In this document: positions 56,101 to 56,972 of the stretch, one piece after another
Numbering within the stretch: position 1 is the first letter of the stretch
Layout of the letters: each line of letters opens with the position of its first letter
Origin: Octopus bimaculoides
Taxonomy: Eukaryota
Assembly (NCBI RefSeq): GCF_001194135.2
Contig: NC_068982.1
Coordinates: 39,398,828-39,462,827 of the forward strand
Direction of reading: 5' to 3'
Length of the DNA stretch: 64,000 nt
Notes under the pieces: generated by a model
Databases searched by the model: none
Seen by the model: the letters and a program-made list of their open reading frames with translations, nothing else
What the model was told of the DNA's origin: nothing
Translations under genes and position numbers: made by a program

Positions 56101-56300
56101 GTGTCTTGACATCATTTACTATGTTGTATAAAAAATGTCAGCTATAATATCAAGAATTTTGTCTGCAAAACAGGTGAACCCCAATAGAGTGTGTACCTGA
56201 CTGATTTTTTTTCCCCTTCATCAGGTGTCTTGGGGAAATATCGAACCTGGGTTCTCATGTAATATAACAAAGACTGGGTTCTCATTCCTAAGGTATTATC

Positions 56301-56301
56301 C

Positions 56302-56355
<54 letters not shown>

Positions 56356-56409
56356 CTTGTTCTTCTTGTTCTTCTTCTTCTTCTTCTTCTTCTTCTTCTT
56401 CTTCTTCTT

Positions 56410-56500
<91 letters not shown>
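56301..56500. repeat. (GTT)n(CTT)n(ATT)n compound microsatellite
   Basis: Directly visible; occupies the position of the internal (AAT)n tract in the left arm. Confidence 0.95.
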
Positions 56501-56692
56501 GCCACTACGGTATATGCCCAGAGGCATATGGCGTAGTGGTTAAGAGCGCGGGCTACTAACCCCAAGATTCCGAGTTCGATTTCAGGCAGTGATCTGAATA
56601 ATCGTAATAATAATAATAATAATAATAATAATAGTAATAATAACATCGAAAAATACCTTAGGGATGAGGACCCAGGTTCGAAATTTCCCCAA

Positions 56693-56738
56693 GACACCTG
56701 ATGAAGGCTGGAGGGTATATCAGCCGAAACGTTGTGTT
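56693..56738 (+). ncRNA. Minimal type-I hammerhead ribozyme, core intact
   Basis: GACAC CTGATGA A GGCTG-GAGGGTATAT-CAGCC GAAAC GTT GTGTT: 5-bp stem I, perfect 5-bp stem II, palindromic AACGTT replacing stem III, GUU triplet. Confidence 0.8.
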
Positions 56739-56972
56739 AGCAACAAACAATAACGTACATAATTTCTCATCTCTTAAATATAGAACTGAAATTATAATAC
56801 AGTTTCGTCGATAATAAATAATTGTTTAATAACACTGTCCGTCATTATTTTCATATATATATGTATGTGTGTGTGTTGTGTGTGCGTATGCTTGTGTTTG
56901 TGTGTGTGTGTAAACATATATATGGCGATACATCTACGACTGTTGTGTATAATTTATCAATTAATATCTATT

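What the first reader, a model, noticed from the sequence alone, without database searches (positions are those of the whole stretch)
56215..56790. tRNA-headed, palindromic SINE-like element carrying an intact minimal hammerhead ribozyme
Seen: the element reads tRNA-like Pol III head (56523-56590, A and B boxes), (AAT)n spacer, unique body, hammerhead (56693-56738), AT-rich tail. The hammerhead has all core bases (CUGAUGA, GAAA, UH) and an extra A between A9 and G10.1. A palindromic AACGUU replaces stem III. The unit is mirrored head-to-head about an axis near 56520, where even the start of the tRNA head is inverted (CCACTACG..ATATGCC / GGCATAT..CGTAGTGG). Established: minimal stem-III-less type-I hammerheads that cleave as dimers, and upstream inverted partial copies, are hallmarks of Penelope-like elements (PLEs). 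An extra A at this position is tolerated in the CChMVd viroid hammerhead. Pol III-type hammerhead repeats are known in Schistosoma (Sm-alpha). Inference: this may be a Pol III-driven non-autonomous retroelement mobilised by PLE machinery and processed by its own ribozyme rather than by a LINE-tail mechanism. I do not know of this family being described in cephalopods but could not search.
Basis: partly seen in the sequence, partly recalled or inferred. Interest (0 to 1): 0.85.

Follow-up and report, generated by a model that had tools for sequence, protein, structure and literature searches.

The report
tRNA-headed Penelope-type hammerhead repeat
This is a short non-coding retroelement with a tRNA-like promoter head and the minimal hammerhead ribozyme typical of Penelope-like retrotransposons, inserted as two copies facing each other; most of this is known biology, and only the tRNA head is a modest new twist.

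Summary
56698-56733(+) is the only site in the window that fits a Penelope-like-element (PLE) minimal-hammerhead descriptor, with 0 hits in 300 simulated sequences. A perfect A box and a 7/9 B box lie at tRNA spacing (56529/56573). The locus is an imperfect head-to-head inverted pair about 56520.

The "extra A" and the palindromic AACGUU are the published defining traits of PLE min-hammerheads, not oddities.

A second, independent inverted pair of the same ~200-nt unit lies at 60589-61061. There one arm ends at GTACA and the other 29 nt further on, which matches the PLE "tail" signature. It keeps only the last 12 nt of the head-side segment (AGTGAYCTGAAT).

Three of the four arms keep some piece of the head region in the correct order, so the head is probably part of the element. 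This rests on two loci only.

The ribozyme does not define the 3' end, because the copies run 61-90 nt past the cut site. Only one of the three hammerhead copies is intact.

No copies could be retrieved from outside the window, and no autonomous partner was seen.

Verdict: a PLE-mobilised, probably Pol III-headed non-autonomous element. It is a new variant of known kinds (Schistosoma Sm-alpha, PLE min-hammerhead repeats). Interest is moderate.

The parts
56215..56305 (-). Locus 1, left inverted partial copy. It holds the unit's 5' body, the helix-I strand, CUGAUGA and AGG, and similarity is then lost. It contains a 27-nt internal duplication (CTGGGTTCTCAT twice, at 56247 and 56274).
   Evidence: (I9, D4)
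56304..56500 (.). (TGT)n-(TTC)n-(TTA)n block. This is the reverse complement of the left copy's internal AAT-type microsatellite, expanded and mutated.
56502..56518 (-). Inverted copy of the first 17 nt of the head (15/17 identical, includes a mutated A box), followed by the 4-nt spacer CAGA (56519-56522), which is the axis of symmetry.
56523..56587 (+). tRNA-derived head: A box at 56529-56539 (perfect) and B box at 56573-56583 (7/9 informative positions), 44 nt apart. It is not a foldable tRNA.
56588..56599 (+). Linker AGTGATCTGAAT, which is shared with locus 2. CAGGCAGTGA also follows the B box of another SINE at 58225.
56600..56643 (+). Internal (AAT)n. Its 3' edge carries the interruption AATAGTA (56630-56636), which is shared with the left arm of locus 2, so the repeat was inherited from the master copy.
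56644..56692 (+). Unit body (ACATCGAAAAATACC...). It contains a second B-box-like GGTTCGAAATT at 56675-56685.
56693..56738 (+). Intact PLE-type minimal type-I hammerhead: helix I 5 bp, bulged A at 56705, helix II 6 bp, no helix III, palindromic A-CG-U. The predicted cut is after U at 56733.
   Evidence: PMC4209133
56739..56759 (+). 3' region up to the proximal end GTACA. It has a 34-nt deletion relative to the locus 2 copies.
56760..56788 (+). 29-nt distal extension (the 'tail'), TAATTTCTCATCTCTTAAATATAGAACTG.
   Evidence: PMC8557442, PMC11167929
60589..60617 (-). Locus 2, left copy: 29-nt tail, 92% identical to 56749-56788.
60618..60794 (-). Locus 2, left copy: unit (60618-60769) plus its (AAT)n (60770-60794). 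The hammerhead is inactivated (GAAA to GAAG, and the top of helix II is mismatched). The copy is 5'-truncated within the microsatellite.
60795..60806 (+). Locus 2, right copy: linker AGTGACCTGAAT. This is the 5' truncation point of the right copy, just after the head.
60807..60909 (+). Locus 2, right copy: internal microsatellite, now (TAA)n(TGA)n.
60910..61061 (+). Locus 2, right copy: unit ending at GTACA with no tail. The hammerhead is degraded (mismatches in helices I and II, AACGUU changed to AACGCU). A candidate 7-bp target-site duplication ATTAATA lies at 60582-60588 and 61065-61071.

Best explanation
Both loci are old, independent insertions of one short non-autonomous retroelement of about 300-350 nt.

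Its order is: a tRNA-derived head with A and B boxes, the linker AGTGAYCTGAAT, an internal (AAT)n, a 50-nt body, a PLE-type minimal hammerhead, and a 61-90-nt 3' region.

Proposed mechanism, step by step:
1. RNA polymerase III starts at the head and reads through the whole unit. No run of four or more T occurs before 56848. This step is inferred.
2. A Penelope-like RT/GIY-YIG protein supplied in trans recognises the hammerhead-containing 3' module. This step is inferred from the architecture.
3. The protein cuts both strands of an AT-rich target. It primes reverse transcription on each strand at one of two internal start sites 29 nt apart. The result is two copies facing each other, each separately 5'-truncated, with the 29-nt 'tail' on one side only. 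This structure is shown by the loci. The enzymology is taken from the Anolis PAc study.
4. The hammerhead cannot fold a helix III on its own. It could cleave only as a dimer of two RNAs through A-CG-U pairing. Cleavage is not what makes the 3' end of the copies. Its role is more likely recognition or dimerisation, or trimming of longer transcripts. This step is inferred.
For: - The min-HHR descriptor gives a unique hit and 0/300 by chance. All PLE min-HHR traits are present: a bulged nucleotide after A9, G10.1-C11.1, a 6-bp helix II, a 5-bp helix I and a palindromic 15.2-16.2.
- The majority consensus of the three hammerhead copies equals the intact copy.
- Two head-to-head pairs have non-homologous flanks, so they are independent insertions.
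- All four arms start at the same ACATCG and are preceded by AAT-type repeats. The AATAGTA interruption is shared between loci.
- Outer ends fall at GTACA or 29 nt further on, with one of each in locus 2. This matches the 30-40-bp tail seen at one end of PLE insertions and the two RT start sites of PAc, which also extends both DNA strands.
- The distal end is 90 nt past the cut site here. In PAc the RT start works out at 85-92 nt past the cut site, from the paper's 111-118 bp into the ORF and a cut site 26 bp after the start codon.
- The head has perfect A-box geometry. Pieces of the head region are present in 3 of the 4 arms, in the right order.
- The two copies at locus 1 both begin at the same nucleotide (GGCATAT), 6 nt before the A box. 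This is as expected if both are full-length copies of an RNA that starts there.
- No other copy of this head exists in the window without the unit.
Against: - There are only two loci, and only one complete head.
- No copy from outside the window could be obtained.
- No autonomous PLE or any RT ORF is present in the window, so the partner is unknown.
- Rfam and ARAGORN recognise neither the hammerhead nor the head.
- Folding energies are ordinary.
- The explicit double-hammerhead fold (-24.3 kcal/mol) is less stable than the best dimer fold (-31.2).
- All substitutions in the other two hammerheads are disruptive, so there is no covariation support.
- The left arm of locus 1 is too rearranged to tell whether it ever had a tail.
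- The candidate target-site duplication is a 7-mer in AT-rich DNA and could be chance.
Confidence: 0.6

Rival explanations
1. The hammerhead unit is an ordinary short non-autonomous PLE derivative, or a pseudo-LTR fragment. The tRNA-like head is a passenger joined once by RT template switching or by a nested SINE insertion. On this view the head is neither a working promoter nor a regular part of the family.
For: Only one of the four arms has a whole head. 'Head + linker + (AAT)n' looks like a complete small SINE with a microsatellite tail. The head resembles other tRNA-headed SINEs in the window. Short non-autonomous Penelope elements without tRNA heads are known (PMC6685494).
Against: - The linker AGTGAYCTGAAT sits in the same place and orientation at both independent loci.
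- The microsatellite edge is shared between loci.
- A PLE pair inserted into a SINE tail would place the SINE outside the two arms, not between them.
- The head family occurs nowhere else in the window on its own.
- Both locus 1 copies start at the same head nucleotide.
Confidence: 0.27
2. It is a metazoan non-LTR retrozyme. In that case a tandem repeat is transcribed, cut by its hammerheads into monomers, circularised and copied back into the genome.
For: It is a type-I hammerhead in a short non-coding, AT-rich repeat. Retrozymes are proposed to depend on PLEs.
Against: - There is no direct tandem arrangement, and both loci are inverted pairs.
- The ribozyme is the minimal PLE type, not the canonical type with loop contacts, and RF00163 gives no hit.
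- No copy begins or ends at the cut site.
Confidence: 0.06
3. It is a foldback or MITE-like DNA transposon. The inverted arms would be terminal inverted repeats, and the hammerhead-like motif would be incidental.
For: Both loci are palindromic, with short unique or microsatellite centres.
Against: - The outer ends are asymmetric by 29 nt in locus 2, and the inner ends are truncated at different points.
- The hammerhead match is far beyond chance and is shared by the copies.
- The centre contains a directional head and linker.
Confidence: 0.04
4. The hammerhead and the promoter boxes are chance matches in repeat-rich DNA.
For: Rfam finds nothing, and thermodynamic z-scores are ordinary.
Against: There were 0 descriptor hits in 300 simulations. 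The A/B box pair is expected about 0 times. The motif is shared by three copies, and their consensus is intact.
Confidence: 0.01

Closest known systems
Minimal hammerheads (min-HHRs) of Penelope-like elements, and the dispersed repeats that carry them (Cervera & De la Pena 2014, PMC4209133; Lunse, Weinberg & Breaker 2017, cited but not readable here)
   Same: - Core CUGAUGA...GAAA...UH with no helix III and a palindromic 15.2-16.2.
- A conserved unpaired nucleotide between A9 and G10.1, and a G10.1-C11.1 pair.
- A long helix II and a short helix I.
- Dual motifs 100-700 bp apart on opposite strands are reported.
- Most copies are dispersed rather than inside full PLEs.
   Different: Here the unit has a defined short length. 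It is preceded by an internal microsatellite and a tRNA-like head. No RT/EN ORF or direct pseudo-LTR is nearby.
Sm-alpha / Sj-alpha SINE-like retroposons of Schistosoma (tRNA-Gln-derived, with a hammerhead; PMC2770079, PMC6765202)
   Same: A short non-coding retroposon with a tRNA-derived Pol III-type promoter region and a type-I hammerhead that has a weak helix III.
   Different: Sm-alpha carries the canonical hammerhead, which Rfam RF00163 detects, and it is often in tandem arrays. This element has the PLE minimal variant (no RF00163 hit) and PLE-type inverted pairs with alternative 3' ends. Sequence homology was not tested.
Poseidon PAc of Anolis carolinensis, the only PLE studied in vitro (PMC11167929)
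   Same: - Both DNA strands are cut and extended.
- Reverse transcription starts at two internal sites, which explains the optional tail.
- The RT start works out at 85-92 nt 3' of the hammerhead cut site (111-118 bp into the ORF, cut site 26 bp after the start codon), against 90 nt here.
- The target is AT-rich.
- Hammerhead cleavage is not needed for insertion.
   Different: PAc is autonomous (RT+EN ORF), and its start sites lie in an AC-rich stem-loop. Here there is no ORF, and the 3' region is AT-rich.
Metazoan non-LTR retrozymes (PMC7229834; bioRxiv 10.64898/2026.07.22.740005)
   Same: Non-coding, hammerhead-bearing, and proposed to depend on PLE machinery. They have been called 'a new type of SINE' (PMC8969392).
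   Different: Retrozymes are direct tandem repeats with canonical type-I hammerheads and are expressed as circular RNAs. This element forms inverted pairs, has a min-HHR and a tRNA-like head, and its ends are not at the cut site.
Classical tRNA-derived SINEs (for example the CORE-like SINEs also present in this window)
   Same: A and B boxes at tRNA spacing, a head whose sequence (GTAGTGGTTAAGAGCGCGGGCT) is of the common SINE-head type, and a short non-coding body.
   Different: The 3' module is not LINE-like and does not end in a simple repeat. The insertion architecture is PLE-like.

Membership tests
PLE minimal hammerhead (min-HHR) | Conserved core CUGANGA ... GAAA ... U-H in type-I order | tested here: met
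   56698-56704, 56726-56729, 56732-56733
PLE minimal hammerhead (min-HHR) | Unpaired nucleotide between A9 and G10.1, with a G10.1-C11.1 pair | tested here: met
   A at 56705; G 56706 pairs with C 56725. Feature defined in PMC4209133.
PLE minimal hammerhead (min-HHR) | No helix III; positions 15.2-16.2 palindromic | tested here: met
   A-CG-U at 56729-56732
PLE minimal hammerhead (min-HHR) | Long helix II (6-8 bp) and short helix I (4-5 bp) | tested here: met
   6 bp and 5 bp
PLE minimal hammerhead (min-HHR) | Family of copies with compensatory changes in the helices | tested here: inconclusive
   Only three copies are available. Their consensus is intact, and all six changes are private and disruptive.
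PLE minimal hammerhead (min-HHR) | Self-cleavage as a dimer | not testable with these tools
   The double-hammerhead fold is possible but is not the best dimer fold.
Penelope-like element (autonomous) | ORF with a telomerase-like RT and a GIY-YIG endonuclease | tested here: not met
   No real ORF lies at or near either locus, so the element is non-autonomous at best.
Penelope-like element (insertion signature) | An inverted copy placed head-to-head at the 5' end | tested here: met
   Seen at both loci. Feature described in PMC8557442.
Penelope-like element (insertion signature) | An optional 30-40-bp tail present at one end only (two RT start sites) | tested here: met
   In locus 2 the left arm carries 29 extra nt and the right arm ends at GTACA. 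The locus 1 right arm has the tail, and its left arm is uninformative.
Penelope-like element (insertion signature) | Direct partial tandem (pseudo-LTR) | tested here: not met
   No direct repeat of the unit is present at either locus.
Penelope-like element (insertion signature) | AT-rich or microsatellite target | tested here: inconclusive
   The flanks are AT-rich and there is a candidate duplication ATTAATA. The whole window is AT- and microsatellite-rich, however.
Penelope-like element (dependence) | The 3' module shared with an autonomous PLE of the same genome | not testable with these tools
   No genome of the source organism is available. Collection scans were empty.
tRNA-derived SINE | Internal Pol III promoter: A and B boxes at tRNA spacing at the 5' end | tested here: met
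   A box 9/9 and B box 7/9 informative positions, 44 nt apart. The unit starts 6 nt before the A box.
tRNA-derived SINE | The head is present in the family's full-length copies | tested here: inconclusive
   One full head, one with 17 nt, one with the 12-nt linker only and one with none. Only four arms were available.
tRNA-derived SINE | A LINE-derived or simple-repeat 3' end | tested here: not met
   The 3' end is a specific sequence with two alternative termini.
tRNA-derived SINE | Transcription by Pol III | not testable with these tools
   The only support is that no T4 terminator occurs before 56848.
Sm-alpha / Sj-alpha | Canonical type-I hammerhead detectable as Rfam Hammerhead_1 | tested here: not met
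   No RF00163 hit even at E<=10.
Metazoan non-LTR retrozyme | Direct tandem repeats of the hammerhead unit | tested here: not met
   Only inverted pairs are present.

The most novel reading that the evidence does not exclude
This could be an undescribed family of true SINEs that use Penelope-like, not LINE, machinery. Such an element would be a Pol III-transcribed tRNA-derived head fused to a PLE recognition module made of the min-hammerhead and the RT entry region. The palindromic A-CG-U of the ribozyme might pair two template RNAs inside a dimeric PLE protein. Both cut DNA ends would then be primed at once, giving the head-to-head insertions.
Probability: 0.35. Interest if true: 0.6.

Novelty: new variant of a known kind. 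Interest (0 to 1): 0.4.

Why it matters
Little is known about how Penelope-like elements move or what their minimal hammerheads are for. If the composite is real, a 300-nt, non-coding, Pol III-driven substrate would be a naturally minimised template. It would define which RNA parts a PLE protein needs: the hammerhead, the two RT start sites and the tail. It could be used directly in the kind of in vitro assay already set up for the Anolis element.

It would also add a SINE-PLE partnership to the SINE-LINE rule. If the head proves to be a passenger, the locus is just one more of the thousands of PLE min-hammerhead relics known in animal genomes.

Tried and rejected
- Rfam at gathering thresholds on the whole window, and at E<=10 on 56100-56900, gave no hammerhead or tRNA hit. 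ARAGORN gave no tRNA, even at lowered thresholds, apart from a nonsense call at 70%.
- Exact-pattern scans for the hammerhead and for the conserved body gave 0 hits. Collections scanned were metagenome contigs (2 scans), viral contigs (1) and prokaryotic genome contigs (1).
- I tried to fish further copies through spurious ORFs. One query was the ORF 56296-56697(-), which spans body, repeat and head. The other was a LINE-like ORF relic at 47057-47275(-), intended to reach genomic DNA of the same organism. Neither found any candidate.
- I looked in the window for a PLE RT/EN ORF. None was found, and the long ORFs are microsatellite or N artefacts. A few relic ORFs gave only weak zinc-finger Pfam hits.
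- nhmmer with a profile of the four arms and with the head found no further copies in the window.
- Segmental duplication as the origin of locus 2 is rejected, because the flanks share only (TG)n.
- Thermodynamic support is absent: z = -0.71 and -0.37. The double-hammerhead fold is not the best dimer fold.
- Target-site duplications: none for locus 1, and only a weak 7-mer candidate for locus 2.
- A possible remnant (TCAG...GTACAC) at the outer end of the locus 1 left arm is too short to trust.
- A resemblance of the tail to the MIR/CORE 'TTTCCTCATCTGTAAAATGG' segment was recalled from memory. nhmmer against the CORE-like SINEs in the window did not support it.
- Two papers, Lunse 2017 and Ferbeyre 1998, were not held.

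Full report
**1. What is at the coordinates**

The sequence reads, left to right:
- a partial inverted copy (56215-56305);
- a long (TGT)n-(TTC)n-(TTA)n block (56304-56500);
- a short palindrome, CCACTACGGTATATGCC / CAGA / GGCATATGGCGTAGTGG, centred on 56520;
- a tRNA-like segment;
- AGTGATCTGAAT;
- (AAT)n (56597-56643);
- a unique body;
- a hammerhead-like motif;
- about 50 nt of specific 3' sequence.

The repeat finder confirms the main inverted pair: 56215-56258 against 56664-56707, 44 nt, 95% complementary (I9).

**2. Is the hammerhead more than chance?**

Rfam finds no hammerhead at gathering thresholds, or at E<=10 on an 800-nt slice. I therefore wrote a descriptor for the 'minimal' hammerhead of Penelope-like elements. 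It requires CUGANGA, an optional one-base bulge, helix II of at least 4 bp closed by G-C, GAAA, a palindromic spacer of 0, 2 or 4 nt, U, H, and helix I of at least 4 bp.

It hits exactly one place in the window on either strand, 56698-56733(+). It hits nothing in 300 simulated sequences with the same dinucleotide statistics.

The monomer fold contains helices I and II. Its energy is ordinary (z = -0.71), so the case rests on the motif and not on stability.

**3. The 'odd' features are the textbook ones**

Cervera and De la Pena (PMC4209133) define PLE min-hammerheads by these traits:
- no helix III;
- a palindromic 15.2-16.2;
- a G10.1-C11.1 pair;
- a long helix II and a short helix I.

They also report pairs of such motifs 100-700 bp apart on opposite strands. 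Cleavage in vitro is low and occurs only as dimers. The motif here meets every sequence criterion. No viroid analogy is needed for the extra A.

**4. The head**

TGGCGTAGTGG (56529-56539) is a perfect A box. AGTTCGATTTC (56573-56583) matches 7 of the 9 informative B-box positions. They are 44 nt apart, as in tRNA genes. Only one other such pair exists in the window, in a CORE-like SINE at 7833(-), and none is expected by chance.

It is not a tRNA. ARAGORN and Rfam find nothing.

On the sense strand there is no run of four T before 56848. A Pol III transcript could therefore cover the whole unit. That is an inference, not an observation.

**5. A second locus changes the picture**

blastn and nhmmer find the same unit at 60589-60769(-) and 60910-61061(+), again head to head. 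The flanks of the two loci share nothing but (TG)n, so these are independent insertions.

The aligned arms show a unit of about 200 nt. It always begins ACATCGAAAAATAC and is always preceded, in RNA sense, by an AAT-type trinucleotide repeat. The repeat's 3' edge carries the same AATAGTA interruption in the locus 1 right arm and the locus 2 left arm. The microsatellite is therefore internal and inherited.

Arms are 89-95% identical, within loci as much as between them. This fits one old burst of insertion.

**6. PLE insertion signatures**

In locus 2 the right arm ends at GTACA (61061). The left arm continues for 29 nt more (TAATTCCTCATCTCTTAAATATAAAACTG). The locus 1 right arm has the same extension (56760-56788).

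PLE insertions are described as 5'-truncated, often with an inverted 5'-truncated copy abutting the 5' end. They carry a 30-40-bp 'tail' at only one end (PMC8557442).

The Anolis PAc protein cuts and extends both DNA strands at AT-rich sites. It starts reverse transcription at two internal RNA sites, and the interval between them is the tail. Its hammerhead cleavage is dispensable for insertion (PMC11167929). In PAc the start lies 111-118 nt into the ORF and the cut site lies 26 nt into it, which is 85-92 nt past the cut. Here the distal end is 90 nt and the proximal end 61 nt past the predicted cut, counted on the locus 2 arms.

A 7-bp candidate target duplication, ATTAATA, brackets locus 2. 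It is weak evidence in AT-rich DNA.

**7. Is the head part of the element?**

AGTGAYCTGAAT follows the head in locus 1. It occurs only once more in the window, at 60795-60806. That site is in the same orientation and the same place, just upstream of the right arm's microsatellite in locus 2. CAGGCAGTGA also follows the B box of an unrelated SINE at 58225, so this stretch belongs to tRNA-type heads in this genome.

The four arms therefore read as follows:
- locus 1 right: full head;
- locus 1 left: the first 17 nt of the head, then the microsatellite;
- locus 2 right: truncated just after the head;
- locus 2 left: truncated within the microsatellite.

This is the pattern expected from 5' truncation or deletion of a composite element. 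A PLE pair inserted into a SINE tail would leave the SINE outside the arms, not between them.

Both locus 1 copies begin at the same base (GGCATAT, 6 nt before the A box). This fits two full-length copies of an RNA starting there. I rate 'the head is integral' as likely. It rests on two loci.

**8. What the ribozyme does not do**

All three copies that include the site run straight through the cut site. Their 3' ends lie well beyond it. The template RNA was therefore uncut, and the ribozyme does not make the 3' end.

Only the locus 1 right copy is intact:
- the locus 2 left copy has GAAG in place of GAAA, plus a helix II mismatch;
- the locus 2 right copy has mismatches in helices I and II and AACGCU in place of AACGUU.

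The consensus of the three copies equals the intact one. The changes are simple decay, some at CpG sites, and none is compensatory.

At locus 1 there is no second sense-strand copy to dimerise with. An explicit double-hammerhead fold is feasible at -24.3 kcal/mol, but it is not the best dimer fold at -31.2.

**9. Comparison with what is known**

Four known systems are closest.
- **PLE min-hammerhead repeats.** These are dispersed by the thousand in animal genomes. This is the family to which the ribozyme belongs by every sequence criterion tested.
- **Sm-alpha/Sj-alpha of schistosomes.** These are tRNA-Gln-derived SINE-like elements with a hammerhead (PMC2770079; PMC6765202). The idea is the same, but the hammerhead is a different variant and a different insertion pattern is reported.
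- **Non-LTR retrozymes.** These are proposed PLE dependants, sometimes called a new kind of SINE. They are tandem and form circular RNAs.
- **Short non-autonomous Penelope elements.** These are noted in butterflies.

In the papers I could search, I found no description of a tRNA-headed element with a PLE min-hammerhead and PLE end signatures, in cephalopods or elsewhere. Repbase, Dfam and SINEBase could not be consulted. The organism itself could not be verified.

**10. Limits**

No copy outside the window could be fetched. Pattern scans of metagenome, viral and prokaryote collections were empty, and two protein-based attempts failed. No PLE ORF lies in the window. Everything about transcription, cleavage and the partner enzyme is inference.

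**11. Verdict**

- The PLE link is strong.
- The Pol III head is probable.
- Ribozyme-defined processing is not supported.

This is a new variant of known kinds, of moderate interest (0.4). It would rise to about 0.6 if a genome-wide census shows a real Pol III-headed, PLE-dependent SINE family.

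Noticed in passing
window 5485-5512 (-) and 7059-7085 (-): Two further hammerhead-like core matches lie outside the family. 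One is CTGATGA-G-GTAACA/TGTTAC-GAAA with a bulged base and a 6-bp helix II. The other is CTGATGA-AGGGG/CTCCT-GAAA-TT. The relaxed descriptor expects 0.32 hits per window by chance, so two extra hits are borderline (P about 0.03). They may be decayed PLE min-hammerheads of other families.
   Followed up: partly
window 7640-7840 (-), 1440-1600 (-), 58150-58300 (+): Other tRNA-headed, CORE-like SINE copies are present. The one at 7833(-) has a perfect A box and a B box 44 nt apart. The one at 58150 shares CAGGCAGTGA after its B box with the head at 56583-56592. The head of the element therefore looks borrowed from this SINE stock.
   Followed up: partly
window 46805-47553 (-), 47949-48221 (+), 42352-42735 (+): There are short ORF relics that look retroelement-derived. 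By eye one has a 'FPIQTD...HNRPD...' LINE-type C-terminal region, and there are C2H2-like zinc fingers. Only weak zinc-finger Pfam hits were found, and there was no hit in the big protein collection.
   Followed up: partly
window 56675-56685: The unit body contains a second B-box-like motif (GGTTCGAAATT) about 20 nt upstream of the hammerhead. This hints that the body itself may descend from a tRNA-like sequence.
   Followed up: no
whole window (for example 400-700, 19600-19950, 29850-30150, 36000-36900, 43950-44350): About 3 kb of N gaps are bordered by (TA)n, (CA)n and similar repeats. GC content is 34% and microsatellites are very dense. This fits a short-read assembly of a repeat-rich animal genome, in which palindromic PLE-type insertions are prone to mis-assembly.
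   Followed up: no
window 57180-57381: A 202-bp nearly perfect (CTTCTT)n array (97% matches) lies about 400 bp downstream of locus 1. (TG)n and (TC)n arrays lie in between. The element sits in a microsatellite cluster.
   Followed up: no
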